Below the pieces are notes generated by a model, which did no database searches, was not told the origin of the DNA, and saw only the letters and a program-made list of their open reading frames with translations. Below, in pieces: positions 12,322-42,036 of a stretch of DNA of 43,696 nt (its first letter is position 1; every line of letters starts with the position of its first letter). Both the position numbers and the translations under genes were made by a program. The DNA comes from Macrostomum lignano (Eukaryota): the NCBI GenBank assembly GCA_002269645.1, contig NIVC01001573.1, positions 222,802 to 266,497 of the forward strand, in the 5' to 3' direction.

Positions 12322-15300
12322 ATGGCTTCAGGCACTCCCATGGAGGTGTCAGTTAGAAATGCCCGCAATGTGCTGATAAGAATTGTCAAAAAAGACCGCC
12401 GCCTTCCGCAGCCCGATGAAATGGCTGAACTAATCAGCATTGACTGCGACTTAGAAATGAAATACCAGCCAATAAGTGTATCTGTACTGCTGCAAAATGT
12501 ACGGGGCAAGCTTAGCAATGTACGGTCTGCGTGCACCCTGCTGCGCAATAAAATGAAGCAGCTGCTGCTGCCGCGGGAGGACCGCAGCACCGATTGGTCA
12601 GTCATGAAAGCCAGCTATCTTCGCTCGTTGCCTAACGCCGCCAAACTCCTTGAAACTATTGGCTTTGTTCTTTGCGGCGAAAATTTTATTGCTAATGAGG
12701 ATCGCATCACATTGCAATCTGTTGTCGACTTTCTGGTAGACGTATCCATGGTAACCGAGGAATTGTCCTTGTATCTTAGCGGACAGCATCCGCGAATGGA
12801 CGTTATTAAATCCTATACATCCGCTGCAGGACAGCTTGAACAGCGGCAGCAACAGACCCACATTACAACAAACCCGCTGCTGATTGTGCAGGAGAGTGAA
12901 CTGCCTGCTCAGAAGGAACCTTCTGGTATTCAGCGCAGAACGGCCACTCTTCCATCATTGCCATCGCCTCCGCTTTCAACTCCCCTTGTCGCTGTATCCT
13001 CTGCTGCAACTGAATCAACAGGACAGAAGCCTCTGCAATCTGCTCAGCAATTTGAAGATCTGAGCCAACAGCCAACCCAGAAACCAAGACCTCCTCCGAC
13101 TCCTTCCTCATCTGCGCCGGCTCAGCTACTCTGCGACCTATGCGGTGATGAGCCTGTTGCATTGGTCTGCAGCAACGAAGCCTGTCCTAGGCGGCACCTG
13201 TGCCTTGGCTGCGATCAGCGCTGGCACGGTCATCCTAGTCGGCGCGGTCACGAGCGCGAAGGTGCCGATACTGTTGAGCTCAGGCGCAAGATTCCATCGA
13301 GTATGACAGCTTCGGCTGTAGCCACGCTTCCTAGGTCCAGAACAGCCTTGGAGCCTGCAGCGTCCGGAATAAAACCGCGCTTGGTAGTGGCGTCTGGCGG
13401 CAAAAATTATGTTAGCTACGTGTCCCAGTTGGGCTTAGCAGCTTCAAACTTCGACTCAGAGCAACAACAACAGTCAAAAGGGAAAGATCAATCTTCAGAT
13501 GTTCAATCTGATGATTTGAAAATACCAAACGAACGTGAAGAACAACAGACTGATGCAGCAGCAACCAAAAAGCAAGAGACTGAAAGTTCAGAGAGTCAAG
13601 AAAGAGAGGAGAAGCAAAGAGGACAGGAAGAACAAGAGAGGCAAGAGCGTAAGGAGCAGCAGAGAAAGCAGGAGGATCTAGAGAAAGAGCGTGACCAGCA
13701 GAGAAGACAGGAAGAACAGGAAAGACAAGAGCAAGAAGAACAGCAAAGAAAGCAGGAGGATCTAGCGAAACAAGAGCGTGAACAGCAGAGAAGAAGGGAG
13801 GAGCAGCAAAAGCAGGAGCGAGAGGAGCTTAGTAGACAGGCGGAGCGAGGAAGAAAAGAACAAGAGAAGCGGATAGCGCAAGAGTCTGACAGCCCAATGG
13901 ATCAAGACTTCGAGCCAAGTCAGCCTGATCATACTAACCAACAGTCGACTGTGCTGCAGCAGATGCTTCAATTCGAGGCAATGGACATCGCAGGCAACAT
14001 GTACTCTAGTGGAGGTGGAAGCCTCGGAAAACCTGACTGGGACTCGAACGGTTTTGCTACAATGCCCACACGCAAAGCTGCACCTAAATTTGTTGATGAT
14101 AGTAACCAAGATGATTGTTCAAACGAGATCTACCGGTCACCCACACAACAAGCGCACCAGAGCCTTACTCAAACTCTTGAATCCAATTCTCACGGCCGCA
14201 GCCACAACCTGGAGCGCCATCGCGAGGGTCTAAGTCAAATTTCACGAGTTGAAGCTAGCCTGGACTTGCGACAGGAAGAGCTGCTAACTTACATGCAAAT
14301 GCTCGAAGTGCGCCCGCATTCAGATCAGGCTCCCGCTGTACCAACGTCAGCTGGCTTTCCGTCTCCGTCTCCGCCACCGACTCCACCGCCGCAACACCCT
14401 TTGCCCGAAGCGCCAATTCTCGAAGCTGAAACTACAGAAGCTCGAATTGCGAGTGAGGAAGACAGCGACCAGGGCAGGTGTGATGAATTTCATACACCTA
14501 GAGCTTCGCCTCCGCCTCTTCCTTCAGCACAGATCGCGTCTTTAACTGATCCAACCGGTCCAGAACACGAGATGGATGATTCAAGCTGGACCTGTCCTAT
14601 CTGTACTGTCAACATCCCTCGCAGCGACCTGAAGATTATTGAAAATAGCAATCGTGCTGTTTGCCCCGTGTGCAGCATGTCTTCCGAGCTTGACACTTAC
14701 AACCAAGTGGAACGCACTGATGCTGGGACGAGCCAATCAGCTACAGCTTCTTCCTCCAGTTGGGAGTGTCAAGTTTGCACTTTTGTCAACAGCGACACTG
14801 ACTGCTGTCAGATCTGCGAGAACCGTCAATCATCGTCTTCTTCATCTGCCGCCGTACCGTCGGCACCCCTAGAGCAGTCAGAATCTGAAGCTTCGGCCAT
14901 CGCTGATAGAAACGCCCGCCTGCTCGATACAATTCGTCGCGCCGACAGCGGCGACGGCGACAATCAAATTGCGGACTCTCGCGTGATTATCGCCGCCTTG
15001 GCCGCGGCTGGCGACCGGGACATTCCGGATGCCCAACTGATCGACTGGGTTCGCCAGGAGTGGCCCCGCCGAGTCGATCGCGTCCGCTTGGAAGCCACGC
15101 GTCGCTACCTCGCCAATCGGCCGGACCTGAAGCCGCATGCGCTGGAAGAGCTGGCTTTCTCGCAACACGAAGTGTCCGAAGCCATGGCCGACTGTCCGCA
15201 CCTGTCCGAGGCCGACTGCCTGCCGGTGGTGCTGGACCAATGCTCCAGGCGCCGCGAACGCGCGGTGCAGGAGTTGGCGCAGCTCTACCCGAACCTGAGC

Positions 15301-15930
15301 TGCCGCGATCATCACGCAGCCGTGGCCAGAGCCGATGGCAGCTTAGAAAAGGCACTCGACCAGCTCAACGGATTAGTGCTGGACAGTTACCTTGGCGACC
15401 TGTCACTGGCCGGCGACGGCCCCGATGCGGACGCTGCTGCTTGCGTCGCATTCGACGGCAGCCAGTTCTCGCTGCACACCCTCATGGTGGACCACGGACT
15501 GCGCAGCGAGTCCATCGCCAGGCGCCTCACTAAGCTGCACAATCACGAAGACTTCGGCCACCATCAGTTGGAGGATCTGGTGGAAGCTGTTAAGGCCACA
15601 GACTGTATGCTGGATGAAGAGAATTGGCTGGAAGAAGTCAGCAGCTACATGAACAAGCAGTGCCCGATCTGCACCGAGAAGTATCCGCGGCACCAATTCC
15701 TGGCCATGGTGAACTGCGGCTGCGAGCTGTGCCAGGAGTGCTTCTATGGCTTCGTCACTACCAATATGAAGGACATGCACGTGACTCACCTGAACTGCCC
15801 GGTGTGCCGCTATCCCAAGGCTAACGATGTTGAGGCATTGCAGTTGCACTTTCAGCACATGCTGGCTCAGATTGCTCACTTCCAGCATCCGGCTTTGCGA
15901 TTTGAACCGGATGATGTAAACCGACTGCAG
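12322..15930 (+). CDS. RNF31: HOIP/RNF31 exon 1 (PUB-like, B-box, coiled coil, two NZF, UBA-like, RING1)
   Basis: The first ATG is at 12322. Motifs: AKLLETIGF (PUB-like), CDLCGD...LCLGCDQRWHGHPSRRGH (HOIP-type B-box), WTCPIC..CPVC and WECQVCTFVN..CQIC (NZF), and CPICTEKY...NCGCELCQEC...LNCPVC (RING1). The donor is CAG|GTGAGT at 15930/15931. The spliced product is about 1470 aa. Confidence 0.9.
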
Positions 15931-15952
15931 GTGAGTTTGCTATTAAAGAGTT

Positions 15953-16200
15953 GCTAGTAAATCAGAAGTAGCTACTAGTAAATCAGAAGTAGCTACTAGT
16001 AGATCAGAAGTAGCTACTAGTAAATCAGATATAGCTACTAGTAAAAAGAAGTAGCTACTAGTAGATCAGAAGTAGCTACTAGTAAATCAGATATAGCTAC
16101 TAGTAAACGAGAAGTAGCTACTAGTAAATCAGAAGTAGCTACTAGTAAATCAAAAATAGCTACTAGTAAATCAAAAGTAGCTGCTAGTAAATCAGAGTAG
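15953..16200. repeat. 21-bp minisatellite (GCTACTAGTAAATCAGAAGTA) in HOIP intron 1
   Basis: About 11-12 visible units. Confidence 0.93.
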
Positions 16201-16333
16201 CAGAAGATGACAGCTCAAAAGCGAAATAATGTTCAGGAAAAACTAAACGCTACTGCTTATAGTACTACTAAGTAGCGAGTAGTGTGCATTTATTTTCAAC
16301 ATGAAACCCACAACCCGCACTCGAACAACCCAG

Positions 16334-16788
16334 GACCGCCTGTTCGACTGGCAGACGATGCGCAACCCCGACTTCGTCTGGTGCAGCCACTGCGGCACCG
16401 GCTTCGAGCTGGATGCCGAGGCCGGCCAGAACCGGTTCACCTGTCCCCGGTGCCGCCGGGACACCTGCAGGGAGTGCCGCAAGCCGTGGGAGAAGCAGCA
16501 CAAAGGACTCAGCTGCGAAGACTTCGAACGCTGGAAGCAGGAGAATGATCCGGAGTTCCAGACCAGAGGCGTCGCCTTCTATCTGCAGCAGCACGGCATC
16601 GAGTGCCCGGCCTGCCACTTCAAGTACGCCTTGGCTGGCGGCGGCTGCCTGCACTTTGTGTGCCGAATGTGCCGGGCGAATTTCTGCTCGGGCTGCGGCA
16701 ATCTGTTCCAGCATACGGACAGCCAGGGCCTGGCGTGCCGTCATCCGCGTAGCTGCCTCTACCATCTGAGAGATTTCGATATTGACAG
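16334..16788 (+). CDS. RNF31: HOIP/RNF31 exon 2 (IBR, RING2 with catalytic Cys, start of LDD)
   Basis: The acceptor is CCCAG|GAC (phase 0). The exon encodes DRLFDWQTMRNPDFVWCSHC...CRECRKPWEKQH...WKQENDPEFQTRGVAFYLQQHGIECPACHFKYALAGGGCLHFVC, closely matching human HOIP ([40 protein letters not shown]). The catalytic TGC is at 16646. The donor is AG|GTGAGA (phase 2). Confidence 0.93.
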
Positions 16789-16801
16789 GTGAGAAAAATT
16801 C

Positions 16802-17119
16802 CTATTGTATCTATTGTATGTTTATATGGCCCCAATTGGGCCAGGTGTGCAACCGACAGCTCAGCCGCAGCTATTGTTGCGCGGCGCATCTGAAGGCTGC
16901 GTACGGCTGTTCAGTCCAAGGACTGGGGGGGGGGGTCGCCACACACACCCTCAGTTACCCCAGCTGATGCTGGCACCAATTTTACAGCTGGGTGAACTGA
17001 AGCAATGCGCTAAGTTAAGTGTCTTGCTCAAGGGCACAAAATTGTTGCAGTGGGATCGGGAATCGAACTCCCGACCTTCAAGCTGTGATTAGTCCGACGC
17101 TCCAACCACTAGGGTACAA
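16802..17119 (-). mobile_element. tRNA-derived SINE (CORE/Meta-like central domain) in HOIP intron 2
   Basis: The minus-strand head has an A-box-like TAGTGGTTGG and a B-box GTTCGATTCC, followed by TTGTGCCCTTGAGCAAGACACTTAAC. A homologous second copy lies at 25121-25380. Confidence 0.75.
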
Positions 17120-17684: not shown

Positions 17685-18033
17685 GCTACAGCAGCTGCTT
17701 CGCATGCACAAAGTCGAATTTCGCTCTTTCGTACCCGACGACGAAGAGTTCGACGAGTGCAAAGTGATGGAGCAGAAGGAGACAGCCGACGGCCTGGTTG
17801 ATGAGGCCTGCAGCAGGCGGGTGCACCCCGGCCGGGCCAACCTGTGCGACAAGCACTACTCAGAGTACCTGGTGACGCTTATCAATAGGAACCGGCTGGA
17901 TCCGGTTGAGATCATGACGCCTGACGAGCTCGTGGCCGTGTGTAGGCGGCACGGTCTCCAGGTGGCCTTGGGGTCAAAAGAGGTCAACGTGGCGGAACTG
18001 AAAAAAGCGATCCTGGCTCAGTGCCCGCTCTAA
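17685..18033 (+). CDS. RNF31: HOIP/RNF31 exon 3 (linear-ubiquitin-chain determining domain)
   Basis: The acceptor GCAG|G restores R-LQQLLRMHKVEF. The exon contains CKVMEQKETADGLVDEAC...LCDKHYSEYLVTLINRNRLDP (human CRVIEQKEVPNGLRDEAC...HYKEYLVSLINAHSLDP). Stop TAA at 18031-18033. Confidence 0.92.
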
Positions 18034-19709: not shown

Positions 19710-20898
19710 GGAGCATTTCACCTGGAGGTTCCTTCAGAAAGAGACATTTCATCTGGTAGATTCCTTTTGACTAAGACAATTCACCAGGTAGATTCCTTTT
19801 GAATATGGCATTTCACCTGGTAGGTTCCTTTCAATGGGACATTTCACCTGGTAGATTCCTTTTAAATGGGATATTTCACCTGGTAGATTCATTTTGAATA
19901 TGGCATTTCACCTGGTAGGTTCCTTTCAATGGGACATTTCACCTGGTAGATTCCTTTTAAATGGGATATTTCACCTGGTAGATTCATTTTGAATGGGATA
20001 TTTCACCTGGTAGATTCATTTTGAATGGGATATTTCACCTGGTAGATTCATTTTGAATGGGATATTTCACCTGGTAGATTCATTTTGAATGGGATATTTC
20101 ACCTTATAGATTCATTTGGAATGGATATTTCACCTGGTAGATTCATTTTGAATGGGATATTTCACCTGGTAGATTCATTTTGAATGGGATATTTCACCTG
20201 GTAGATTCATTTTGAATGGGATATTTCACCTTATAGATTCATTTGGAATGGATATTTCACCTGGTAGATTCATTTTGAATGGATATTTCACCTGGTAGAT
20301 TCATTTGGAATGGGATATTTCACCTTATAGATTCATTTGGAATGGATATTTCACCTGGTAGATTCATTTTGAATGGGATATTTCACCTTATAGATTCATT
20401 TGGAATGGATATTTCACCTGGTAGATTCATTTTGAATGGGATATTTCACCTGGTAGATTCATTTTGAATGGGATATTTCACCTGGTAGATTCATTTTGAA
20501 TGGGATATTTCACCTTATAGATTCATTTGGAATGGATATTTCACCTGGTAGATTCATTTTGAATGGGATATTTCACCTGGTAGATTCATTTTGAATGGGA
20601 TATTTCACCTGGTAGATTCATTTTGAATGGGATATTTCACCTTATAGATTCATTTGGAATGGATATTTCACCTGGTAGATTCATTTTGAATGGATATTTC
20701 ACCTGGTAGATTCATTTGGAATGGATATTTCACCTGGTAGATTCATTTTGAATGGGATATTTCACCTGGTAGATTCATTTTGAATGGATATTTCACCTGG
20801 TAGATTCATTTTGAATGGGATATTTCACCTGGTAGATTCATTTTGAATGGGATATTTCACCTGGTAGATTCCTTTTGAATGGGACATTTCACCTGGCA
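19710..20898. repeat. 31/32-bp minisatellite (TTCACCTGGTAGATTCATTTTGAATGGGATAT)
   Basis: About 37 units, degenerate at the left end, abutting the next gene. Confidence 0.96.
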
Positions 20899-20923
20899 GA
20901 TAATTTTTGTCTCTCATCTGTGC

Positions 20924-23017
20924 ATGGCTTACAGTCTGTCCGCTCAGAGTCAAGCGGCTGCAGCCTCAATGCAGCCGCACCAGCAGCCAAATCTCCGTGA
21001 GGTTGAGATGTGCAGCTTCTGCGGCGACAATCCTGTGCAGCGGATCTGCTCAGAGCCCAGCTGCAGTCGCAATCGCCTGTGCAAAGACTGCAGCGTACTG
21101 TGGCACGGCCATCCGAATAGGAAAGATCATCGAGTTCATGACGTTAACGATGACAAAAATAGCTCGCACTATAACATGCCTCCGCAAACACGGATTATCC
21201 AGCACAGGGCCAAGACTTCTGAAAGTTCTATCCAGCGGCACAAGTCCTGTTTGCCACAGGAACGTCAATCGTCAACCATGCAGCGAACCTCCAGTGGCGC
21301 TCAATATGACACCCTTGCAGCACGAGCGCAAACCGCTGCAGAGGCTCCGGCTGCTATTGGCGGTGGTGTGGAGTGGCAGTGCGAGCACTGTACTTTCATG
21401 AACAGTCCTGAAAGTCCGGCTATTGACTCGACTCGGCGCCTACTTTGCGAAGTCTGTGGCAAAACAACTGATCGAGCTGTTGCTACTCAGAGGGCGCCAA
21501 TGTCTTTTGATAGCCAGCGTCCAGTTCAAGCTCCGCAGCAATGCCAGCAGCCTGATGTTGTTTTAAAACAACCGCAGTCTGTGGACAGCGCACTGGCAAG
21601 GGAGAGCAAGCGCCCAGTGTATTCTTCAACTACTGTGAGAGATTCGAATGGATTTGATCCGATGTCACAGCAGCAGTCTCAGACAAACTATTCAAGGCAA
21701 CATGAAGCCAACGGGCAGTCAGTTAATCAAAATGTCCTTCAACCACAATATGCGCAGCAACAACAGACCCAATCTAGTAGTTTAAGCTCTGCTCCAAAAA
21801 CCTCGTACGAGCAGTCTCGTGACCAAAAACACGAACCTTCACTCGATTCAGCTACAGATAATCCACCACTGCAGGCCGTACGCGGGGAACCGCAGGTCCA
21901 GCATCGTCTGAGACAGGAAACATTCCAGCAGATTCGCAACATGAATGCTCCTGATACAGAGAAGGAGCTTTTGCTAAGACTTGTCCAGGATCCAAAGTTC
22001 TGTAAATTTCGGCTAGACGATTTGGTGAAGGCTGTTCAGTCTGGCGGTGAGCTCGCTTACGAAGACGAGTTCATGCTTGCCTACCTGTGCAGCAAATGCC
22101 AGAAGTGTGAAAAACCCGAGCCTCGTCACTACCAAGTGTGCATGGCTCAGTGCTCTTGTCAACTGTGCTTTGATTGCTTTAGAAAGTTTGTGTTCGAGTG
22201 CCTCAACCCTGCTAGCAACATCAGCCCGAGTCGATTTTCTTGTCCTGGCTGTCAGCAGCCCAAGCCAGACGATGTGGAGCACTTTGCTACTCACATAAAC
22301 TTTCTGAGCTTGCAGCTTGAGCAGATCGTAGAGACTTGCAGCTGGGTTAGTGAAGCTGTCATTGCTGACTTTGAAAGGACTTCAGACGAATGCTGCCGTG
22401 AGTTGTCTATAAAGATAAGTAAATTTTCTGACACGCTGTCTTCCACTCAACCAGCTTATGATAGGCTAAACGCGAAAGGATTTTACTGTCCAGAATGCCA
22501 ATGTTTTTTTCCGAGTTCGAAATCCACCGCGGATCATATTGCATGCTACAGCTGCAAGCATTCATTCTGTCCTTGCTGCAACACCGCAAGTTCTATAATG
22601 CTGTCTAGCCATGAGAAGCAGTGCTTCTTTAAGTCTAAGAATGTCAGCATTTCCGTGCTACAGTTTATACTGAAAGAGTCTAAAATTCCTTTCGACAAGA
22701 CCGCCAGGCGCAGACGGAACAAAAGCTCATCCGAAAGGGGCGGAAGAAAGATCGTTGATGAGGAGTGGCGATGCTCAGCGATCGACTTTAAACATGGAGG
22801 TTCCGGTAGCGGTGGCTTTCTACAGTGCGAAAATCGAGTCTACAAGAAGGTTTGCGTCTGTGAGCGGCACTACAAGGAGTACCTGTTGGACTTGATCAAT
22901 GAGAACAATATCGTTATGGAAAACGTATGTTCGTCGTTATCGGCCTTTAAAATAAACTGGGTTGAAAGGGGTCGATATATGAAGAATTTCTTTAAAAGCC
23001 TTTTTTCCGACGGGTAG
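20924..23017 (+). CDS. HOIP-like paralog 2, intronless: B-box, NZF, RING1, no IBR, RING2 with catalytic Cys->Ala, LDD (predicted pseudo-ligase)
   Basis: B-box CSFCGD...LCKDCSVLWHGHPNRKDH; NZF WQCEHCTFMN...CEVC; RING1 CQKC...QCSCQLCFDCF...SCPGC. RING2-like CPECQCFFPSSKST-A-DHIACYSCKHSFCPCC aligns gap-free to CPACHFKYALAGGG-C-LHFVCRMCRANFCSGC. LDD ...CERHYKEYLLDLINENN. The start could be 20924 or 20969. Confidence 0.82.
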   Translation: MAYSLSAQSQAAAASMQPHQQPNLREVEMCSFCGDNPVQRICSEPSCSRNRLCKDCSVLWHGHPNRKDHRVHDVNDDKNSSHYNMPPQTRIIQHRAKTSESSIQRHKSCLPQERQSSTMQRTSSGAQYDTLAARAQTAAEAPAAIGGGVEWQCEHCTFMNSPESPAIDSTRRLLCEVCGKTTDRAVATQRAPMSFDSQRPVQAPQQCQQPDVVLKQPQSVDSALARESKRPVYSSTTVRDSNGFDPMSQQQSQTNYSRQHEANGQSVNQNVLQPQYAQQQQTQSSSLSSAPKTSYEQSRDQKHEPSLDSATDNPPLQAVRGEPQVQHRLRQETFQQIRNMNAPDTEKELLLRLVQDPKFCKFRLDDLVKAVQSGGELAYEDEFMLAYLCSKCQKCEKPEPRHYQVCMAQCSCQLCFDCFRKFVFECLNPASNISPSRFSCPGCQQPKPDDVEHFATHINFLSLQLEQIVETCSWVSEAVIADFERTSDECCRELSIKISKFSDTLSSTQPAYDRLNAKGFYCPECQCFFPSSKSTADHIACYSCKHSFCPCCNTASSIMLSSHEKQCFFKSKNVSISVLQFILKESKIPFDKTARRRRNKSSSERGGRKIVDEEWRCSAIDFKHGGSGSGGFLQCENRVYKKVCVCERHYKEYLLDLINENNIVMENVCSSLSAFKINWVERGRYMKNFFKSLFSDG

Positions 23018-25548: not shown

Positions 25549-28028
25549 ATGGCAACAAGCGCAGCTGCTGGCATCAACGAGGTTGAAATGTGCAAATTCT
25601 GCGGCGACGAGCCTGTCGCTCGCGTCTGCACAGCTCCGGCCTGCGCGCGCAAGCAGCTGTGCGTCAACTGCGACGAGATCTGGCACGGCCACCCGAGCAG
25701 ACGCAGTCATCAGCGGCAGGAGGTTGATGTTTTATTGCGAGAAAACGGCCGCAGTGACCAGCCGTTGACGCAACCGCAGCAGCAAGGTTATCCTTGGTCG
25801 TGTCCGCACTGCACATTTCAAAATGTCAGCGCAGTTCAATGGAAGCCAGAAGATCGGTTGATGTGCGAAGTGTGCAGCAAGACCAGCGTTGGCAGGGAAT
25901 TGAGAGAAGCTGCACCAGCTCAGACAAGCAACAGCAATACAACCAAGACTAAGAAGTCGAGTAAAAAGTCTTCATCACCAAGCACGGAGATTGCCTGTCC
26001 TACTTGCACCTTTGTCAATACTGCGAAGGGAGCAAAACAATGCGAAATGTGCAACTCTCAGCTGCCATCGCCTTCGAAAAAGCGTGAAAATCCAGCAGCT
26101 GCTTCGCCTAATGCGGAGAATAGTATTGGATTAAATGACTTGAGTCCTCAAGAAAGACAGAGGCAGTTTCAAGCTCAAGCTGCAATTGGCAGACAGAATG
26201 CTGGGCGTTCGAATCAGGGAGATCAGCAGCCGCCCAGCCAATCAGACAGCGAATCTCATAGAAAGCAGGCGCATGCTTCAGCGGTGGAAGACCGCGTAGA
26301 ACAAAAGCGCCAGCGAACTCAGCCGCCGTCTGAAAATCGTGCTGCAGCTGTGGAAACCTCGGCGAATTCTCTAAGAAAAGAGACGCGGGCGTTTTCCAGG
26401 TCCGACGTGGTACCGGCCGGCATCGCTACAGAGTCCAAACAGCTTGAAGATGCTGAGTATCCACTCTATCAGCAGCAGTTGGAGGAAAAGGAATTGCAGG
26501 TACAACTGGCTGAACTGCTGGCAGTCCAGGAGGCAGAAAAAAGGCAGTTTACTCAGGCTCAGCTGCAGGAAAGAGAGCAGCTAATACAGGAACTGCAGAC
26601 GCGGCTAAAAGAAGAGCAGGAGCAGAGACTTCGTACAGAGAGGCGTTTTAAGAAAGAGGCCACGGAAAGACAGCGGCTGGAGTTGGCAATGCTGGAGCAG
26701 CAGCGGCTGGAGAGAGAAAAAAGAGAAGAACTCGAAAGGCAAGCGAGAATCAAAGATGAGAACAGGAGGCAGAGAGAAGGTGAAGAAATGCGACAACGGA
26801 AGAGAAGAGAAGAGGCGGAACGAAAGAAAAAAGAGAAGGAAGAGGCTGAGCGGTTTAGAAAGGAGAGAGAAGAGGCTGAGCGGTTGAGACAGCAGAGAGA
26901 AGAGGCTGAGCGGTTGAGAAAGGAGAGAGAAGAGGCTGACCGGTTGAGACAGCAGAGAGAAGAGGCTGACCGGTTGAGACAGCAGAGAGAAGAGGCTGAG
27001 TGGTTGAAACAGCAGAGAGAAGAGGCTGACCGGTTGAGACAGCAGAGAGAAGAGGCCGACCGGTTGAGAAAGGAGAGAGAAGAGGCTGAGCGGTGGAGAA
27101 AGGAGAGAGAAGAGGCTGAGCGGTTGAGAAAGGAGACAGAAGAGGCGCAGCGACTGTGGAAGAGAGAAGAGGCTGAGCGACAACGAAGAAACCAATCTCT
27201 GCGGAACGCGTCGGCAGCCGTAGGGCGATGGGAAAGGGCAGAGGAAGAGCGGCTGCGCCAAGACCAAGAGGCTGAAGCCATGCAGAATGACCTTCAGCTG
27301 ATCAGAAAGACGAGGCTGCAAAGAGGTAAACAGGTGCCGCTGGATGAAAATCCCAGAAAATATCAAGGTGACGAAGCGAGGCAGAGAAGGGCAGATGATA
27401 CGACTTGGCAGATGGAAGCGGTTACTCATGCCAGCGGTCTGCAGTTTGGGGCCGATGCGATCTCATTTCCATCCCGTGCTAGATCATCGGCAACAGTTTC
27501 ATCGAGGCGAGTTGAGGATTCTGAGTCTGTTGATGCTGCTGAAAAGTTGCTTAATGGGATATATGGTCCTGAAACATCAGTAAATGACCTTCACAAAGTA
27601 AATACGTCTGATGAATCTGATGAGTTTGATGAGCCAAAAAATCGTCTACTCGAGTTACTGGCAGAATGAAAGCTCAAAAGGCTGAGACGAAACTGCAATG
27701 CGCTCACTGCGGCAAGTACAGAGCCATTACGGGCCCTATTAAACCTGTTGGTTTTCAGTGCTTTAATTGCTACAAGCACACTTGCAAGATGTGCGGCCGG
27801 CCTTGGGAAGATGTGCATACAGGCAGAAAGTGCAAAGAACTTGACAGTCTTCCAGGAGTAGCCCCTTCTCCAAAGCGTGGCTCTGTGAGCCGACCTGGGA
27901 GTGCACAGATTCAGGTCATGCGGTGCACGAGATGTCGTGTCCATGTGGATACAAATTTGAAAAGAGACTCATCGAATGTTATGTGTCGCAATTGTGGAAA
28001 TATTTTGCATCTTCCGAGACCCTACTGA
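25549..28028 (+). CDS. HOIP-related paralog 3: B-box, two NZF, long E/R coiled coil, IBR plus truncated RING2-like zinc ribbon (one-base frameshift at 27636-27641)
   Basis: B-box CKFCGD...LCVNCDEIWHGHPSRRSH; NZFs WSCPHCTFQN..CEVC and IACPTCTFVN..CEMC. ORF 25549-27669 overlaps ORF 27666-28028 (CAHC...QCFNCYKHTCKMCGRPWEDVH..C, IBR-like). The paralog at 33165 has A7 where this copy has A6 and reads through in frame. Confidence 0.75.
26840..27180 (+). repeat. 33-bp coding tandem repeat (11-aa EEAERLRQQRE), single-alpha-helix/coiled-coil like
   Basis: About 10 units GAAGAGGCTGAGCGGTTGAGACAGCAGAGA-like; also present at about 32920-33165. Confidence 0.9.
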
Positions 28029-29290
28029 GTTTTTTATGCATGTTGTCGATCGGTACAAAGCGATGGTCTATAGCTGCAGAAAGTTAAGATTGGTTATTGC
28101 TAGCTCGTGCTAACTGTACTCGATAAATTTTCGACCATATTCCTAATAGAAAACACTCCTATGATTTGAATTATTCTAGTTACTTCTCTTAATTTCAAAC
28201 CCTGTCCTCTATGTGATAAAAAGAAATTCAAAATTAATTTAATATTGGTAGTTTTTACGGCGTACGAAGTCATCTGATGGCCTTTATTGTTTTTTGTTTT
28301 TCTGCCCACAATGTTTATGTTTTTATCCACTCAAGTGCCGTGAATTCATAAAAATGACTGAAAACGTATATTTAGGGCTGTGAGTATGAAAAAAATATAT
28401 CAATGTAGTTTTATATTAACGACAAGTATTAGTATAAAGCCATTAGTTATAGATTCATGATCCAGTTTGACAGTCCACTGTAGTTCAAGTATCGCAGTAT
28501 CTCGAATTCTATTTCTGTACTGTCAGTATCCTTTTAGTGTAAATTAGTCATGAATGGCCTCGGATTTTTCATTTTTTCGTTATAACAAAATGTACTAAGC
28601 GTTTGCGTGTATTCCAGAACGGCAGAAGCCTTCGTCCTACAGTAGTACACGTCGACTTTTGATTTTGTACTTTCTGTTTTTTTCAGACCAAAATATATCA
28701 ATTTTTGTAACGTTATTTTTATCACTATGGTGCTAATAGTGCTTTGGTGTTTGTTTTTATTTTTAGTAATACAGGACTAGCAATCCGCCCTCCCCCCAAT
28801 GGGAGGCAAAAACTAAAGCAATAAGGTTTTGACCTTGTACAGTCATTATTGTTAGTTTCTTGAGGAAAATGGTGTTTAAAGCAAAACAGCAACAGCCCCG
28901 AAAGTCGGCTATCTGGCCTAAGATATCAGCATCCCCTGTGAGCTTTGGCATCAAAACCTCCCTTTAAGCCATGGCTTAACTTAAACCCTTCTCCCCTATG
29001 ATGCTTGGCCTACCAACAACTTCCGATTGAGCCTTGACATCTCATCATCTCCTCACTAAGAGCCACAGAATTTCTACAACTCCCCCGTGCGCTTTGACAA
29101 TTCAGCAGTTTTTAATTGAAAAGTTACCCAGAAAATTCTAATCGAAAGAGTAACTACTGACGTACTTAAACGAGTTGTTTTTTGTCTAAATGACTAAGGC
29201 TGCTTGCGTCACCCCTCAAAGCAGTCACAGTGAGCTAGTGGTCAATACAGCTGAACACATACAGCAAACCTTTTCGAACATAAATTCCAG

Positions 29291-30081
29291 ATGTCGCTGT
29301 TTGACGTTCGCTCGATTGCGTGGACCTGCGCCGGCTGTAGTCTTAGAAACGAGCTTCGATTTCATTGGTCTCCACAGCTGCACCAAAAGATGGTGAAGCT
29401 GACTGTGCTAAGCTTGAGAAGCTCCATCAGGCCAGCTCTGAGTTTCCTTCCTGCCTGACCTCGCTCGAGTGCGGCCAGTGCGGCTGCCTCGCTGCCAGCT
29501 GCGTTTCGCCGCGAGGAGTTTTCGGCGCCTCATCATCGTCTAACAAAGGAGAGCTCCGTCTTGAGCCGCGGCATAGGTTGGCCTGCCTACAGAGGCGGGC
29601 TCGAGTTCAGCTTGAGCAGCTGCGGAAACTGACTGACCAGCTGAGCTCTGTTGAAGCTGCGGTAGCCGCAACCGAACTGGCTGATCAAGCTGCAGGTAGA
29701 GAGGCTGAAAAATTGGCTGAAACTGCCTCATCTTCCAGAGCTGCCAGCAGCCGCCGCGGTTCCAGCTGGTCCGAGCGGCTGTTCGGCTCCCTGGCCGGTC
29801 TGGCCCGGCACAACAGACGGCAGTCGTCACTGTCTGCAGCAACTACTGACAGTAGCAAAGACGTTGACGCTTTCGAGCGTTGGAGGTCTGGAGTTCGAGC
29901 CCAGCTGGCCGCCGAAGCCGAAGCCGCCAGGCAGCGTCGAGCAGCCGAGACGCCGGAGCAGCGGCGCAAACGAGCCCAGCGTCGGCGAGATCGACGTCTC
30001 CGACGCCGGCTGAAGGAGGCCGAAGCCGAAGTCGAAGAGCGTCGGCGTCGGGAGGCCGAGACAGCGTTTTCATCTGGTTAA
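29291..30081 (+). CDS. NZF-like plus coiled-coil exon/gene (frameshift near 29350)
   Basis: TTCCAG|ATG SLFDVRSIAWTCAGCSLRN joins by a 1-nt shift to ORF 29365-30081 (...TSLECGQC...VSPRGVF...LRKLTDQL...). It is paralogous to the exons at 30210 and 31347. Confidence 0.5.
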
Positions 30082-30209
30082 CTGGCCACAAAGGCAATTA
30101 AAAGATTGTTAAGCTTTGGCATCAAAACCCCCTTGAGTTTTCGTACCGAACAAATACTCATGTAACTTGGTCAAGATACTCTTTGTAATTTCAAATTGTT
30201 TAACTCCAG

Positions 30210-30734
30210 GTGCACCTTCCGGACCGCAACCAGCTGCTGTGGAACTGTCCGCACTGCACCTTCACCAACGATGAGGTGCTCAGCGACAGCTCCAAGCAGC
30301 AGCAGCTGCGCTGCGCTGTCTGCCAGGCCGACTGCGCCGCCGACGTCAGCATCCGCGGCGTCTGGCTGACCTCTCAGCGAGCCACCGAAGCTCTGATTGG
30401 CGAGGCGAAACTCGCCGACGAGCTGCAGTCGATCGTCCGCGATCATGAGGTGCGCATCGCCGAGCTGACGCAACGGCTGGAGGCCGCACAGCGTCGACTG
30501 TCGTCAGCTGCTCCGGCGCGGCCCAACCTGCTGCTGCACCGAAGCCAGTCTGAAACGGCCGCCGCCGCTGCCCAGCCTCCGTTGCTAAGCAACCGTGGCG
30601 GACTGCGTCGCTCCAGCGCACCAACCGGAGCCTCGCAGCGTCGCTGCAGTGGCAGCGCAGCAAACGGCAAAGCTGACCGGTCGGCTCTGGTCTACGAGCA
30701 GCTGGTTGATAGTGATGAAGAAGATTCAAATTAA
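30210..30734 (+). CDS. NZF plus coiled-coil exon/gene lacking its own ATG
   Basis: Acceptor TTTAACTCCAG|GTG; encodes VHLPDRNQLLWNCPHCTFTN...LRCAVC...RIAELTQRL. GC-rich coding-like composition; stop TAA at 30734. Confidence 0.65.
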   Translation: MHLPDRNQLLWNCPHCTFTNDEVLSDSSKQQQLRCAVCQADCAADVSIRGVWLTSQRATEALIGEAKLADELQSIVRDHEVRIAELTQRLEAAQRRLSSAAPARPNLLLHRSQSETAAAAAQPPLLSNRGGLRRSSAPTGASQRRCSGSAANGKADRSALVYEQLVDSDEEDSN

Positions 30735-31112
30735 TTTTGCTGCATAACATGTGCTAGCAATACCAATGTCCGCTAATTCCATGAGGAACTGGCTATTGCG
30801 ATATTCTCGCTTTTTACCCACAGTTTTTTAAATTGTGTTCAAAAGCCAATAGGCGGCTGTCTGTTTTACATTTTTAATTATGCGATTAACCAGTTCAGTA
30901 TTTAATTATTTTTTCTGACAGTATTTGATACAGACTGCTACAGTTTACAATAAATATTGATTGCCAATTATAATTTATCAAAAAGTTGCGTTAAGACTTT
31001 ATTCTTCATTCATAATCAATTTCGGTTCTCGGCCTGCTAGGCTATCATTTTTGTGCTCAAGGCAAGATTGGCAGCATTTTTCTCAATCAAATATTTCACC
31101 CGTTCCAGCGGC

Positions 31113-31265
31113 ATGTCAGCGGACAGCCCGCCCCAGCTGTGCAGCCGTTGCAACAGCCGGCCCGCAGTGCTCGCCTGCGCTGAGTGCCCCGGTCAGCTGC
31201 TGTGCGACACCTGCGACACCGACTGGCACCAGCAGACTGAGGAGCGGCGGCTGCATCGCAGATCG
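31113..31265 (+). CDS. HOIP-related paralog 5, exon 1 (B-box)
   Basis: MSADSPPQLCSRCNSRPAVLACAECPGQLLCDTCDTDWHQQTEERRLHRRS, 51 codons, with a phase-0 donor TCG|GTGAGC. Confidence 0.75.
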
Positions 31266-31346
31266 GTGAGCAGCTCGTGCTGGGCTGAGTGAATATTGTC
31301 ACTGATCTGAGTTTATATTTAATGAGTAGCATCGCACAATTTTCAG

Positions 31347-33559
31347 ATTCACCTGGCTGGCGCTGCTATCGTGTCCTGGACGTGCAGGCACTGCCTATTT
31401 TCGGAAAACCAGCATGTTTTGACCAACTCGGATTCGCAGTACTTGGTGTGCTTAGTGTGCGAGACCGAGAGCGCAGAGTTTTTCCGCGTTGACGGCATCG
31501 TGTGCTCTGACAGAGTAGCGGATCAGATCAGACAGGACTCAGGGAGAATTGCTGAGCTGACTGATCAGCTTGGCCAGTTAAAGCTGCAGCTCGAGGCTCA
31601 GGAGGCTGAGTTACAAACATCTGCGGTTCAAAGCAGAGAACTGCACGTTCAGCTGCAGGAAAGAGAGCAGCAAATACAGGAGCTGCAGAGGCGGCTAAGA
31701 GAAGAGCAGGAGCAGAGACTTCGTACAGAGAGGCGTTTCGAGAAAGAGGCCACGGAAAGGCAGCGGCTGGAAAGAGAAAAAAGAGAAGAACTCGAAAGAC
31801 AAGCGAGAATCAAGGATGAGAACAGGAGGCAGAGGGAAGCTGAAGAAATGCGACAGCGGAAGAGAACAGAAGAGGCAGAACGAAATAAAATAGAGACAAA
31901 AGCGGCTGAGCGATTGGAAAATCGTGTCGCAGCAGCGGAAGCCTCGGCAAATTCTCCAAGTAGAGAGACGCGAGCGTCTTCGAGGTCCGACATGGTACCG
32001 GCCGGCACCGCTACAGAGTCCAAACAGCTTGAAGATGCTGAGTATCCACTCTATCAGCAGCAGCTGGAGGAAAAGGAGTTGCAGGTACAACTGGCTGAAT
32101 TGCTGGCAGTCCAGGAGGCAGAAAAAAGACAGTTAACTCAGGCTCAGCTGCAGGAAAGAGAGCAGCTAATACAGGAGCTGCAGACGCGGCTAAAAGAAGA
32201 GCAGGAGCAGAGACTTCGTACAGAGAGGCGTTTCGAGAAAGAGGCCACGGAAAGGCAGCGGCTGGAAAGAGAAAAAAGAGAAGAACTCGAAAGACAAGCG
32301 AGAATTAAGGATGAGAACAGGAGGCAGAGAGAAGGTGAAGAAATGCGACAGCGGAAGAGAACAGAAGAGGCAGAACGAAAGAAAATAGAGACAAACGCGG
32401 CTGAGCGATTGGAAAATCGTGTCGCAGCAGCGGAAGCCTCGGCAAATTCTCCAAGAAGAGAGACGCCAGCGTCTTCGAGGTCCGATATGGTATCGGCCGA
32501 CATCGCTACAGCGTCCAAGCAGCTTGAAGATGCTGAGTATCCACTCTATCAGCAGCAGATTGAGGAAAAGGAGTTGCAAGTACAACTGGCTGAACTGCTG
32601 GCAGTCCAGGAGGCAGAAAAAAGGCAGTTTACTCAGGCTCAGCTGCAGGAAAGAGAGCAGCTAATACAGGAACTGCAGACGCGGCTAAAAGAAGAGCAGG
32701 AGCAGAGACTTCGTACAGAGAGGCGTTTCAAGAAAGAGGCCATGGAAAGGCAGCGGCTTGAGTTGGCAATGCTGGAGCAGCAGCGGCTGGAGAGAGAAAA
32801 AAGAGAAGAACTCGAAAAGCAAGCGAGAATCGAGGATGATAAGAGGAGGCAGAGAGAAGGTGAAGAAATGCGACAACGGAAGAGAAGAGAAGAGGCGGAA
32901 CGAAAGAAAAAAGAGAAGGAAGAGGCTGAGCGGTTGAGACAGCAGAGAGAAGAGGCTGAGCGGTTGAGACAGCAGAGAGAAGAGGCTGAGCGGTTGAGAC
33001 AGCAGAGAGAAGAGACTGAGCGGTTGAGACAGCAGAGAGAAGAGGCTGATCGGTGGAGAAAGGAGAGAGAAGAGGCTGACCGGTTGAGACAGCAGAGAGA
33101 AGAGACTGAGCGGTTGAGACAGCAGAGAGAAGAGGCTGATCGGTGGAGAAAGGAGAGAGAAGAGCCAAAAAAATCGTCTACTCGAGTTACTGGCAGAATG
33201 AAAGCTCAAAAGGCTGGGACGAAACCGCAATGCGCTCACTGCGGCAAGTACAGAGCCATTACGGGCCCTATTGAACCTGTTGGTTTTCAGTGCTTTAACT
33301 GCTACAAGCACACTTGCAAGATGTGCGGCCGGCCTTGGGAAGATGTGCATGATGGAAGAAAGTGCAAAGAACTTGACAGTCTTCCGAAGTAGCCCCTTCT
33401 CCAAAGCGTGGCTCTGTGAGCCGACCTGGGAGTGCACAGATTCAGCTCGTTTACTGCCCGGGATGTCGTTGCAATGTGGATACAAATCTGCAAAGAGACT
33501 CATCGAATGTTATTTGTCGCAATTGTGGAACTGTTTTGCATCGTCCGAGACCCTACTGA
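31347..33559 (+). CDS. HOIP-related paralog 5, exon 2: NZF-like, repeated 165-aa coiled-coil module, IBR, zinc ribbon (frameshift near 33386 gives a stop at 33392)
   Basis: Acceptor TTTTCAG|ATT, in frame with ORF 31371-33392. The 3' part is nearly identical to paralog 3. A 1-nt deletion relative to paralog 3 creates TAG at 33390-33392, and the homologous frame continues to PRPY* at 33559. Confidence 0.75.
31640..32780 (+). repeat. 495-bp internal tandem duplication (165-aa module, two full copies plus a partial third)
   Basis: Shadow ORFs 31649-32023 and 32144-32518 are offset by exactly 495 nt, and QLQERE...QLEDAEYPLYQQQ recurs. Confidence 0.9.
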
Positions 33560-42030: not shown

Positions 42031-42036
42031 TCGCAG

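What the first reader, a model, noticed from the sequence alone, without database searches (positions are those of the whole stretch)
12322..33559. Tandem HOIP/LUBAC-derived gene array: one active linear-ubiquitin ligase followed by non-catalytic derivatives
Seen: an intact HOIP is followed on the same strand by five related units. Two keep the diagnostic B-box motif WHGHP(S/N)R, one has a divergent B-box, all five have NZF or NZF-like fingers, and three retain RBR fragments; none retains the RING2 Cys-x-His. Known: HOIP is typically single-copy in the vertebrates and insects studied, and it builds Met1-linked chains for NF-kB, cell-death and xenophagy signalling. Inference: a lineage-specific expansion giving decoys, adaptors or regulators (B-box oligomerisation, NZF ubiquitin binding, coiled-coil scaffolds) around one catalytic subunit. 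This could be an undescribed invertebrate alternative to, or elaboration of, the HOIL-1/SHARPIN partner system. It is the strongest candidate for a novel system here.
Basis: partly seen in the sequence, partly recalled or inferred. Interest (0 to 1): 0.85.

Follow-up and report, generated by a model that had tools for sequence, protein, structure and literature searches.

The report
Flatworm HOIP ligase gene-family array
In the flatworm Macrostomum lignano, the gene for the linear-ubiquitin ligase HOIP is followed on the same strand by a run of its own diverged copies that have lost the catalytic cysteine; at least two are still conserved and transcribed, which makes this an undescribed lineage-specific expansion of an immune-signalling enzyme family whose function is unknown.

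Summary
The window is the last 43.7 kb of contig NIVC01001573.1 of Macrostomum lignano.

**The ligase.** A three-exon HOIP/RNF31 orthologue (1470 aa) keeps RING1-IBR-RING2-LDD and the catalytic Cys-x-His.

**The five downstream units**, all on the same strand:
- Unit 2 is a pseudo-ligase: HOIP-type B-box, NZF-like finger, RING1, decayed IBR, RING2 with Cys replaced by Ala, and an LDD.
- Units 3 and 6 carry a B-box, NZF-like fingers, a charged helical repeat and a HOIP-type IBR.
- Units 4 and 5 are small NZF-like proteins with a helical region.

**Evidence for function.** Units 2 and 3 are under purifying selection across three genomic copies (dN/dS 0.3-0.5; every coding indel is a multiple of 3). 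Both have transcript-derived models, and unit 2 shares a transcriptional unit with HOIP. Unit 4 looks like a pseudogene. Units 3 and 6 carry 1-nt frameshifts in this copy.

This is not one ligase plus decoys. The genome holds a second HOIP (HOIP-B) array with further active and dead paralogues, and all M. lignano members form one clade. No unit has a UBL domain, so replacement of HOIL-1/SHARPIN is unsupported.

**Verdict.** A new variant of a known family. The mechanism (ubiquitin-binding modulators or scaffolds) is inferred.

The parts
12322..15930 (+). HOIP-A exon 1. It holds an N-terminal conserved region (PUB not detectable), a HOIP-type B-box (13129-13269), an E/Q/R-rich helical repeat, a long-loop NZF-like finger (14584-14685), a canonical NZF (14758-14826), the UBA_HOIP pair and RING1 (from 15658).
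   Evidence: UBA_HOIP scores 30.3 bits against a cut-off of 22.4. The donor is CAG|GTGAGT.
16334..16788 (+). HOIP-A exon 2: IBR and RING2. The catalytic Cys1308 is codon 16646-16648 and His1310 follows. The residue equivalent to human D936 is Ser1343 (16751-16753).
   Evidence: Pfam IBR_1 4.9e-24 and IBR 2.7e-11. Alignment to 5edv. Splice sites. Codon positions.
17685..18033 (+). [quoted passage not shown]
   Evidence: PF18091 3.6e-26. Acceptor. The spliced product of 1470 aa equals PAA66284.1.
20879..23017 (+). Unit 2, a single-exon pseudo-ligase. Domains: B-box WHGHPNR (20999-21148), NZF-like finger (21368-21472), RING1 (about 22094-22336), a vestigial IBR, a RING2-like domain (about 22466-22582) with Ala551 in place of the catalytic Cys (22529-22531), and an LDD-like domain (about 22658-22912). 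The real start may be Met31 (20969), because the first ATG lies inside a 32-bp minisatellite.
   Evidence: The ORF is intact in 3 copies, dN/dS is 0.32-0.51 (p<0.01), and all indels are multiples of 3. The copy on another contig is named Mlig012393.g2.
25549..27669 (+). Unit 3, main ORF. Domains: B-box WHGHPSR (25576-25731), long-loop NZF-like finger (25792-25887), NZF with T-F (25984-26067), and a charged helical region that includes a 30-bp tandem repeat (26839-27179). The reading frame is lost at an A6 run (27636-27641).
   Evidence: The homeologue L001 has one 801-aa ORF. dN/dS is 0.37-0.44. GenBank PAA66285.1 covers it.
27633..28028 (+). Unit 3, C-terminal module in another frame: a HOIP-type IBR followed by a CxxC...CxxC zinc ribbon.
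   Evidence: RNF31 IBR structure 2ct7, E = 7e-4. BLASTP to the HOIP IBR 1e-8. It is in frame with the main ORF in L001.
29291..30081 (+). Unit 4. The ATG directly follows a ttccAG acceptor. It has a degenerate NZF-like first knuckle (29318-29356) and an Ala/Arg/Glu-rich helical region. A 1-nt deletion lies at 29369/29370. The 3' end is cut by a roughly 3.3-kb deletion relative to the homeologue. It is probably a pseudogene in this copy.
   Evidence: dN/dS is 0.82, p = 0.33. No gene model exists for it.
30210..30734 (+). Unit 5. The exon starts at an AG acceptor (30208-09) with no upstream in-frame ATG. It has a long-loop NZF-like finger with T-F (30240-30326), a helical region and an acidic tail. 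The start codon could be supplied by the spliced leader, which ends in ATG (inferred).
   Evidence: Spliced-leader sequence from PMC8629364. dN/dS is 0.60, not significant.
31113..31265 (+). Unit 6 exon 1: a divergent B-box (WHQQ...H).
   Evidence: Pfam ANCHR-like_BBOX 30.7 against 27 and zf-B_box 24.2 against 24.1. Donor TCG|GTGAGC.
31347..33392 (+). Unit 6 exon 2. Domains: NZF-like finger (31371-31463), a charged helical region with 2.2 copies of a 495-bp tandem unit (31649-32758) and a 30-bp repeat (32919-33164), and a HOIP-type IBR (33228-33386). A premature stop follows a 1-nt deletion at 33385/86.
   Evidence: The homeologue in L005 is intact.
33377..33559 (+). Unit 6: frameshifted remnant of the C-terminal zinc ribbon.
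   Evidence: Against unit 3 there are 21.7 non-synonymous and 3.3 synonymous differences, giving omega 2.2 and no sign of constraint.
34095..35027 (+). RagA-like GTPase gene, which bounds the array on its 3' side. It is not part of the family.
   Evidence: dN is 0 and dS is 0.067 between copies.

Best explanation
The region is a lineage-specific, same-strand tandem array of the HOIP (RNF31/LUBEL) gene family in the flatworm Macrostomum lignano.

**Shown**
- HOIP-A is a full-length RBR-LDD ligase gene with the catalytic Cys-x-His.
- Unit 2 is a HOIP paralogue that keeps the B-box, the NZF-like finger, RING1 and the LDD. It has a decayed IBR and Ala at the thioester cysteine, so it cannot work as an RBR ligase.
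- Units 3 and 6 are recently exchanging paralogues (93% identical over about 1.7 kb). They are built from a HOIP-type B-box, NZF-like/NZF fingers, a long charged helical repeat and a HOIP-type IBR.
- Units 2 and 3 are conserved as coding sequence in three genomic copies and have transcript-derived models.
- HOIP and unit 2 carry the same transcriptional-unit name (Mlig012393.g1 and .g2).
- Unit 4 is probably a pseudogene here. Units 3 and 6 have C-terminal frameshifts in this copy.
- The array changes structure between homeologous contigs.

**Inferred**
- The non-catalytic paralogues retain HOIP's targeting and ubiquitin-binding modules (T-F-containing NZF-type fingers, the B-box, and in unit 2 the E2-binding RING1) but not its chemistry.
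- They most likely act as ubiquitin-binding, oligomerising modulators of Met1-ubiquitin signalling: competitors or scaffolds recruited to the same ubiquitinated sites as the active HOIPs.
- They are expressed with HOIP from an operon-like precursor resolved by spliced-leader trans-splicing.
For: **Identity**
- Unit 2 is 97% identical to M. lignano PAA67416.1.
- The window maps to NIVC01001573.1.

**HOIP**
-.

**Unit 2 homology and the dead active site**
-.
- The library search gives only HOIP-family hits.

**B-box, NZF and IBR homology**
-.
- The B-box signature [FYW]H.HP.R..H is shared with tick, ant, mite and fish HOIPs.

**Selection**
- dN/dS: HOIP 0.16-0.28, unit 2 0.32-0.51 (p 3e-4 to 9e-3), unit 3 0.37-0.44 (p about 0.01), RagA 0.
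- Coding sequences differ by 1.6-3.6% and show 9 of 9 indels as multiples of 3. Non-coding flanks differ by 7-22% and show mostly indels that are not multiples of 3.

**Transcription**
- The GenBank Mlig models come from RNA-seq. The suffix .gN marks genes inside one transcriptional unit (PMC5730564; names).
- The spliced leader ends in ATG and would be in frame at the unit 5 acceptor.

**Family context**
- A second array around HOIP-B holds both active and Cys-less members.
- In a neighbour-joining tree all M. lignano members are monophyletic (100%), and unit 2 clusters with the two other dead paralogues (100%).
Against: - No functional data exist. Ubiquitin binding by the long-loop fingers is untested, and the Drosophila LUBEL NZF bound ubiquitin chains poorly (PMC5090701).
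- Selection on units 4, 5 and 6 is not distinguishable from neutrality with the few differences available.
- Between paralogues, the C-terminal IBR/zinc-ribbon modules show omega of 1 or more.
- Three of the five units have frameshifts in this copy. One of them lies in a homopolymer and may be an assembly error.
- Unit 2 has no gene model on this contig, and units 4 and 5 have none on any contig.
- The AF2 model of the C-terminal half of unit 2 is poor outside RING1 (pLDDT 58.7), and its alignment contained HOIPs.
- The dead-paralogue clade could partly reflect long-branch attraction.
- HOIP-A has Ser at the acceptor-ubiquitin Asp (human D936), so even its Met1-linkage activity is an inference.
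Confidence: 0.62

Rival explanations
1. The five units are non-functional debris. They are decaying tandem duplicates of HOIP fragments in a duplication-rich, recently polyploid genome, and they are transcribed only as read-through.
For: - Units 3, 4 and 6 carry 1-nt frameshifts in this copy.
- Unit 4 has dN/dS 0.82 (not significant) and a 3' truncation.
- The frameshifted zinc ribbon of unit 6 shows no constraint.
- Between contigs the array differs by a mariner insertion, an extra unit and a 3.3-kb indel.
- Units 4 and 5 have no gene models.
Against: - Unit 2 (2.1 kb) is open in three copies. It has only indels that are multiples of 3 and dN/dS of 0.32-0.51 (p<0.01), while adjacent non-coding DNA is 7-22% diverged with frequent indels that are not multiples of 3.
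- The same holds for the unit 3 N-terminal 330 codons.
- Unit 3 and unit 6 are each intact in another copy.
- A dead-RING2 subfamily is also retained in the HOIP-B array.
Confidence: 0.15
2. Units 3 to 6 are exons of one large gene, as in the GenBank 760-aa and 790-aa models that run from the unit 3 ATG to the unit 6 stop.
For: GenBank PAA66285.1 spans 25549-33392 on this contig. A 790-aa model spans 21.7 kb on the homeologous contig.
Against: - The 5.5-kb "intron" starts and ends at homologous A-runs of two 93%-identical paralogous segments and has no GT-AG.
- The model also skips one 10-aa repeat. Both features are typical of a transcript mapped across paralogues.
- Units 3 and 6 each have their own ATG, B-box and, in other copies, their own stop codon.
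- No in-phase consensus donor links unit 4 to unit 5.
Confidence: 0.06
3. The paralogues are dedicated subunits of a flatworm LUBAC-like complex and replace HOIL-1L and SHARPIN around HOIP.
For: - The units share NZF-type fingers with HOIL-1L and SHARPIN.
- Unit 2 shares a transcriptional unit with HOIP.
- Dead paralogues sit next to both HOIP-A and HOIP-B.
- HOIP-A keeps the UBA_HOIP pair that docks partners in mammals.
Against: - No unit has a UBL domain, the element that binds the HOIP UBA. Pfam gave no ubiquitin-like hit.
- The presence or absence of HOIL-1L and SHARPIN in the genome was not tested.
- Drosophila LUBEL works without partners (PMC5090701).
- There is no interaction evidence of any kind.
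Confidence: 0.15

Closest known systems
HOIP / RNF31 (vertebrates), the catalytic subunit of LUBAC
   Same: HOIP-A shares the B-box, NZF fingers, UBA_HOIP pair, RING1-IBR-RING2, the catalytic Cys-x-His and the LDD. It matches human RBR-LDD structures at E = 8e-79. Unit 2 is collinear with RING1, RING2 and LDD.
   Different: - The N-terminal PUB domain is not detectable by sequence.
- The acceptor-site Asp is Ser in HOIP-A.
- The family here is multi-copy, whereas single orthologues were returned for the other animals sampled.
- Unit 2 lacks the IBR zinc ligands and the catalytic Cys.
- Units 3 to 6 lack RING1, RING2 and the LDD altogether.
Drosophila LUBEL (CG11321) and arthropod 'linear ubiquitin E3 ligase' orthologues
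   Same: They are invertebrate HOIP orthologues with an N-terminal B-box and NZF plus RBR-LDD (PMC5090701). The B-box signature H.HP.R..H is the same, and they are 36-37% identical to HOIP-A over the RBR-LDD.
   Different: LUBEL is a single 2-3-thousand-residue protein that acts alone. No tandem non-catalytic paralogues are described for it.
HOIL-1L (RBCK1) and SHARPIN, the LUBAC accessory subunits
   Same: They are small partners that carry an NZF finger and modulate HOIP. HOIL-1L is itself an RBR.
   Different: Both dock through a UBL domain, which none of the units has. The units derive from HOIP itself (B-box, HOIP-type IBR and LDD), not from the HOIL-1L or SHARPIN lineages.
TRIM/RBCC proteins and B-box plus coiled-coil scaffolds
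   Same: Units 3 and 6 combine a B-box with a long helical region, an arrangement that mediates oligomerisation in TRIM proteins.
   Different: They have no N-terminal RING. The B-box is of the HOIP type. The helical region is an E/R/K/Q-rich repeat that may be a single alpha-helix rather than a coiled coil (not tested).
Pseudoenzyme paralogues of ubiquitin-system enzymes, for example UEV proteins, which are inactive E2 variants (from general knowledge)
   Same: The fold and partner-binding surfaces are retained and the catalytic cysteine is lost. The proteins are kept under selection and act as regulators or adaptors.
   Different: I found no described catalytically dead HOIP paralogue in the literature searches. 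The function here is untested.

Membership tests
HOIP/RNF31/LUBEL (RBR-LDD linear-ubiquitin ligases) | RING1-IBR-RING2 in order | tested here: met
   **HOIP-A:** Pfam IBR and IBR_1 hit, and the match to 5edv covers RING1 to LDD at 8e-79.
**Unit 2:** RING1 and a RING2-like domain are present, but the IBR has lost its zinc ligands, so this feature is only partly met for unit 2.
**Units 3 and 6:** IBR only.
**Units 4 and 5:** none.
HOIP/RNF31/LUBEL (RBR-LDD linear-ubiquitin ligases) | Catalytic Cys (human C885) and His887 in RING2 | tested here: met
   The feature is met for HOIP-A only (Cys1308 and His1310). It is not met for unit 2, which has Ala551 with the His kept. Units 3 to 6 have no RING2.
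HOIP/RNF31/LUBEL (RBR-LDD linear-ubiquitin ligases) | C-terminal LDD (Pfam PF18091) | tested here: met
   HOIP-A scores 91.5 bits and unit 2 scores 28.5 bits, both above the cut-off of 23. In unit 2 the HPRDC motif has become HEKQC. Units 3 to 6 lack the domain.
HOIP/RNF31/LUBEL (RBR-LDD linear-ubiquitin ligases) | Synthesis of Met1-linked ubiquitin chains | not testable with these tools
   This needs an in vitro ubiquitination assay. Note that HOIP-A has Ser at the position of human D936.
HOIP/RNF31/LUBEL (RBR-LDD linear-ubiquitin ligases) | HOIP-type N-terminal B-box and NZF fingers | tested here: met
   **B-box:** present in HOIP-A and units 2, 3 and 6. The motif is shared with arthropod and fish HOIPs.
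**Fingers:**
LUBAC accessory subunits (HOIL-1L, SHARPIN) | UBL domain that binds the HOIP UBA | tested here: not met
   Pfam gave no ubiquitin-like domain hit in any unit at E up to 0.1 or 10.
LUBAC accessory subunits (HOIL-1L, SHARPIN) | Ubiquitin-binding NZF finger | tested here: inconclusive
   The NZF-like fingers have W-x-C-x2-C-T-F, but the loop is 16-17 residues long and the Pfam scores are below threshold. Binding was not tested.
TRIM / RBCC | N-terminal RING followed by B-box and coiled coil | tested here: not met
   No RING lies upstream of the B-box in units 2, 3 or 6.
M. lignano SL-trans-spliced operon (multi-gene transcriptional unit) | Same-strand genes named .g1, .g2 and so on within one assembled transcriptional unit, with short repeat-adjusted intergenic distances | tested here: inconclusive
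   On the homeologous contig, HOIP is Mlig012393.g1 and unit 2 is Mlig012393.g2 (nomenclature). The unit 3/6 model is Mlig013262.g3. Spacers are 0.13-2.9 kb and largely minisatellite. SL-read and poly(A) tracks were not available.

The most novel reading that the evidence does not exclude
Macrostomum has built its own multi-subunit linear-ubiquitin machinery out of HOIP paralogues. In this reading, catalytically dead HOIPs (unit 2 and its relatives in the HOIP-B array) and the B-box/NZF/IBR proteins (units 3 and 6) assemble with the active HOIPs through B-box, helical-repeat or RBR contacts. They would take over the activating and targeting roles that HOIL-1L and SHARPIN play in vertebrates, which would be an independent, paralogue-based invention of a LUBAC-like complex.
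Probability: 0.15. Interest if true: 0.7.

Novelty: new variant of a known kind. Interest (0 to 1): 0.5.

Why it matters
HOIP is the only ligase family known to make Met1-linked ubiquitin chains. The searches here returned one orthologue from each of the other animals sampled.

A lineage in which HOIP has radiated into at least two same-strand arrays is a natural experiment on how this machinery is regulated without, or in addition to, HOIL-1L and SHARPIN. The arrays hold full-length, short active and catalytically dead members. The pseudo-ligases are under purifying selection, and one shares a transcriptional unit with an active ligase.

M. lignano is transgenic-tractable and RNAi-tractable, so the idea can be tested directly. 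The practical limits are that this genome is generally rich in duplications and that no functional evidence exists yet.

Tried and rejected
- **Exact-product lookup of the unit 2 ORF** found nothing, because the annotated copies differ by a few residues.
- **Homology search with the unit 3 N-terminus** returned nothing. The cause turned out to be a database artefact: the matching GenBank proteins (P0064, P0065) are filed under a RagA cluster representative. It does not show absence.
- **PUB domain in HOIP-A:** no PDB or Pfam match even at E = 10, so I do not claim it.
- **AF2 model of the C-terminal half of unit 2:** only the UBA-like/RING1 part is confident. The Foldseek hits to HOIP are not independent of the HOIP-containing alignment.
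- **Cis-splicing of unit 4 to unit 5:** no in-phase consensus donor exists.
- **The single 760/790-aa gene model** was rejected as a transcript-mapping chimera.
- **TRIM or RanBP2 origin of the domains** was rejected.
- **Assembly or haplotype artefact** was rejected. The units are 20-60% identical to one another in protein, and the same array occurs on three contigs.
- **The RBR fragment at 43.3 kb** is an unrelated Ariadne-type gene.
- **Literature searches** for HOIP expansions, flatworm HOIP or the Mlig gene identifiers found nothing relevant.

Full report
**Source of the window.** The sequence is eukaryotic, with GC-rich exons, AT-rich spacers and many minisatellites. The unit 2 ORF is 97% identical to GenBank [quoted passage not shown]. 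Exact-sequence look-ups then placed the window on contig NIVC01001573.1 of assembly GCA_002269645.1: window coordinate = record coordinate - 222,801, and the window ends at the contig end. Two other contigs of the same assembly carry 91-98% identical, collinear copies of the locus: L001/L005 on NIVC01001484.1 and L002 on NIVC01001037.1. I treated these as homeologous or allelic copies and used them as an internal comparative data set.

**HOIP-A.** The long ORF from 12322 ends in CAG|GTGAGT at 15930. An acceptor at 16333/16334 and a second intron (16789-17684) join it to two further exons in compatible phases.
- The 1470-aa product matches human RNF31 RBR-LDD structures at E = 8e-79 over RING1 to LDD.
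- It hits Pfam IBR_1, IBR and the LDD family PF18091 and the UBA_HOIP pair (30.3 bits against a cut-off of 22.4).
- It equals GenBank PAA66284.1.
- The thioester Cys (1308) and His (1310) are present. The Arg of the acceptor-ubiquitin pair is kept, but the Asp (human D936) is Ser.
- A PUB domain could not be detected.
- "Intact HOIP" is therefore confirmed at the sequence level. Met1-chain activity is inferred.

**Unit 2 (20879/20969-23017).** This single exon encodes a HOIP-type B-box (WHGHPNR), a long-loop NZF-like finger, a weak UBA_RNF31-like helix, RING1 with all ligands, about 45 residues where the IBR should be (ligands lost), a RING2-like domain and an LDD-like C-terminus.
- Its only PDB matches below E = 0.01 are RNF31 chains (4e-5 and weaker).
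- PF18091 passes its cut-off.
- In a MAFFT alignment with ten HOIP-family RBR-LDDs, the catalytic Cys column holds Ala551 and HPRDC has become HEKQC.
- An AF2 model is confident only for the UBA-like/RING1 part. That part superposes on HOIP RING1 at 2.2 Å, and all top Foldseek hits are HOIP. The alignment used contained HOIPs, so this is not independent evidence.
- An exhaustive HMMER scan of 1.84 billion representatives found only 36 hits. Apart from its own cluster (P0001), the best is at 4e-20. Every named hit is an M. lignano paralogue or an RNF31/LUBEL orthologue from echinoderms, hemichordates, annelids, molluscs, arthropods or fishes.
- Unit 2 is therefore a HOIP-derived pseudo-ligase with no detectable orthologue outside M. 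lignano.

**Units 3 and 6.**
- *Unit 3* (25549-27669 plus 27633-28028) has a B-box (WHGHPSR), a long-loop NZF-like finger, a canonical-spacing NZF with T-F, a long E/R/K/Q-rich helical region containing a 30-bp coding tandem repeat, an IBR and a terminal zinc ribbon. The best PDB hit of the IBR is the RNF31 IBR (2ct7, 7e-4), and it matches the neighbouring HOIP IBR at 1e-8.
- *Unit 6* is a two-exon gene: 31113-31265 holds a B-box that passes two Pfam B-box cut-offs, followed by an 81-nt GT-AG intron and then 31347-33392. Its layout is the same.
- The two units share 93%-identical DNA over about 1.7 kb. Unit 6 additionally carries 2.2 copies of a 495-bp segment homologous to unit 3. They are therefore exchanging sequence.
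- In this contig unit 3 loses frame in an A6 run where its paralogue has A7 and where the homeologue has a single 801-aa ORF. This may be an assembly error.
- Unit 6 has a 1-nt deletion that is not in a homopolymer and that creates a stop. Downstream of it the zinc ribbon shows 21.7 non-synonymous against 3.3 synonymous differences. The homeologous unit 6 is intact.

**Units 4 and 5.**
- *Unit 4* (29291-30081) begins with an ATG directly after a ttccAG acceptor. It has only the first knuckle of an NZF-like finger (HMM E = 0.42). It carries a 1-nt deletion relative to L001 and lacks its 3' end because of a roughly 3.3-kb difference from the homeologue. Its dN/dS is 0.82 (p = 0.33). I regard it as a pseudogene in this copy.
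- *Unit 5* (30210-30734) starts exactly at an AG acceptor and has no upstream in-frame ATG. The M. lignano spliced leader ends in ...GCATG (PMC8629364), so trans-splicing there would supply an in-frame Met. This is inferred. Its finger is a good match to the family profile (1.5e-7). With only 11 substitutions, selection cannot be judged.

| Gene or unit | dN/dS (Nei-Gojobori, between copies) | Significance |
|---|---|---|
| RagA | 0 (dS 0.067) | - |
| HOIP | 0.16-0.28 | - |
| Unit 2 | 0.32-0.51 | p = 3e-4 to 9e-3 |
| Unit 3 | 0.37-0.44 | p about 0.01 |

- More telling, the coding regions of HOIP, unit 2 and the unit 3 N-terminus differ by 1.6-3.6% and all nine indels are multiples of 3. The spacers beside them differ by 7-22% and have an indel every 50-70 bp, mostly not multiples of 3.
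- The GenBank Mlig models are built from RNA-seq, and the suffix .gN denotes genes cut out of one transcriptional unit (PMC5730564). On NIVC01001484.1, HOIP is Mlig012393.g1 and unit 2 is Mlig012393.g2. The unit 3/6 model is Mlig013262.g3 or .g1.
- That 760-aa model (790 aa on the homeologous contig) is a mapping chimera. It follows unit 3 to the A-run and jumps without GT-AG to the homologous point of unit 6. It also skips one 10-aa repeat. It does show that an mRNA of the unit 3/6 type exists.
- Units 4 and 5 have no model.

**Wider family.** The HOIP query also found HOIP-B (P0004/P0005; 32-34% identical; B-box WHGHPDR; full architecture). Around HOIP-B, on the same strand, lie the following:
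- two large paralogues whose RING2 lacks the Cys (GYSVFHC and GVPVFHC), one of which has a B-box and NZF like unit 2;
- two kinds of short NZF-RBR-LDD genes that keep GGC(L/M)H;
- a B-box-only gene;
- further members.

In a neighbour-joining tree of the RBR-LDD region, all M. lignano sequences form one clade against arthropod and human HOIPs (100% bootstrap). Unit 2 groups with the two other dead paralogues (100%). Long-branch attraction cannot be excluded. So "one ligase plus decoys" is too narrow: this is a radiation of the whole family, with a dead-ligase subfamily retained beside both full-length HOIPs.

**Mechanism.** What is shown is loss of the thioester cysteine in unit 2, loss of RING1, RING2 and LDD in units 3 to 6, and retention under selection of the B-box, the NZF-type fingers (most with the T-F dipeptide), RING1 and LDD in unit 2, and the IBR in units 3 and 6. 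From that I infer non-catalytic, ubiquitin-binding or oligomerising modulators of Met1-ubiquitin signalling that are co-expressed with HOIP. None of the units has a UBL, so they would not dock on the HOIP UBA the way HOIL-1L and SHARPIN do.

**Novelty and score.** HOIP-A itself is an ordinary new family member. The same-strand arrays that mix active and catalytically dead HOIP paralogues are, as far as four literature searches show, undescribed. I rate the finding a new variant of a known kind, with moderate interest (0.5). It is a real, selectable, testable family expansion in a tractable animal, but it has no functional evidence and sits in a genome known for duplication.

Noticed in passing
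window 41383-43696 (+): An Ariadne-1 (ARIH1)-type RBR ligase gene lies here, split by minisatellite-filled introns and cut by the contig end. It has the Ariadne N-terminal region, RING1, IBR and a RING2 with GGCNHM. It is a different RBR family and is unrelated to the HOIP array. The homeologous model hits Pfam UBA_ARI1, IBR and Ariadne.
   Followed up: partly
window 34095-35027 (+): A single-exon RagA-like GTPase gene bounds the array. Its protein is identical between copies (dN 0, dS 0.067), which makes it a useful local yardstick for synonymous divergence.
   Followed up: yes
window 3536-4783, 10304-10870, 15954-16201, 18209-19015, 19694-20901, 35151-35884, 36445-37013, 37512-40370, 40407-41376, 42515-43041: Minisatellites with 18-95-bp units are exceptionally dense and fill introns and spacers. 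One array is 2.9 kb of a 27-bp unit. Copy numbers differ greatly between homeologous contigs. For example, the 20-bp array after HOIP is 0.8 kb here and about 5 kb in L001.
   Followed up: partly
window 20879-20901: The first ATG of the unit 2 ORF lies inside the last copy of the 32-bp minisatellite. The true start is therefore probably a downstream Met (Met16 or Met31). The GenBank copies are marked partial and begin at AYSLSAQ.
   Followed up: partly
window 16751-16753: HOIP-A has Ser where human HOIP has D936, one of the two LDD residues that position the acceptor ubiquitin. HOIP-B keeps the Asp. The residue is the same in all three HOIP-A copies.
   Followed up: partly
window 9411-11381: A retroelement fragment lies here (reverse-transcriptase motif YxDD at about 9544-10428). 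It is flanked by a 149-bp inverted repeat, 9411-9559 and 11233-11381, 98.7% identical. More reverse-transcriptase-like ORF pieces lie at 747-1275 (-).
   Followed up: no
window 16830-17002 and 25114-25278; also L006 12921-13322: A short dispersed repeat of about 170 bp (88% identical) sits in HOIP intron 2 and again upstream of unit 3. A similar sequence occurs in the HOIP-B array. It is possibly a SINE- or MITE-like element.
   Followed up: no
window 1843-2689 and 5849-6668: An 850-bp direct repeat, 78% identical, lies upstream of HOIP. Part of the second copy was used as a spurious first exon in the UniProt model A0A1I8H8R9.
   Followed up: no
L001 18739-19950 and 20954-21154; L005 1-2917: The homeologous contig carries extra array members that are absent from the window. 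These are a mariner-type transposase insertion, an additional B-box gene (MSANLCSICGHQ..., 366-aa product) and a second copy of unit 4. The array is therefore structurally polymorphic between copies.
   Followed up: partly
L003, L004, L006 (NIVC01000691.1, NIVC01000110.1): A second HOIP-family array surrounds HOIP-B. It holds two Cys-less RING2 paralogues (1114 and 982 aa), short active NZF-RBR-LDD genes (533 and 667 aa), a 117-aa B-box-only gene and others, all on one strand.
   Followed up: partly
protein database (P0064, P0065): The two GenBank unit 3/6 proteins are filed in a 90%-identity cluster whose representative is a RagA protein. This hid them from the homology search and could mislead other look-ups.
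   Followed up: yes
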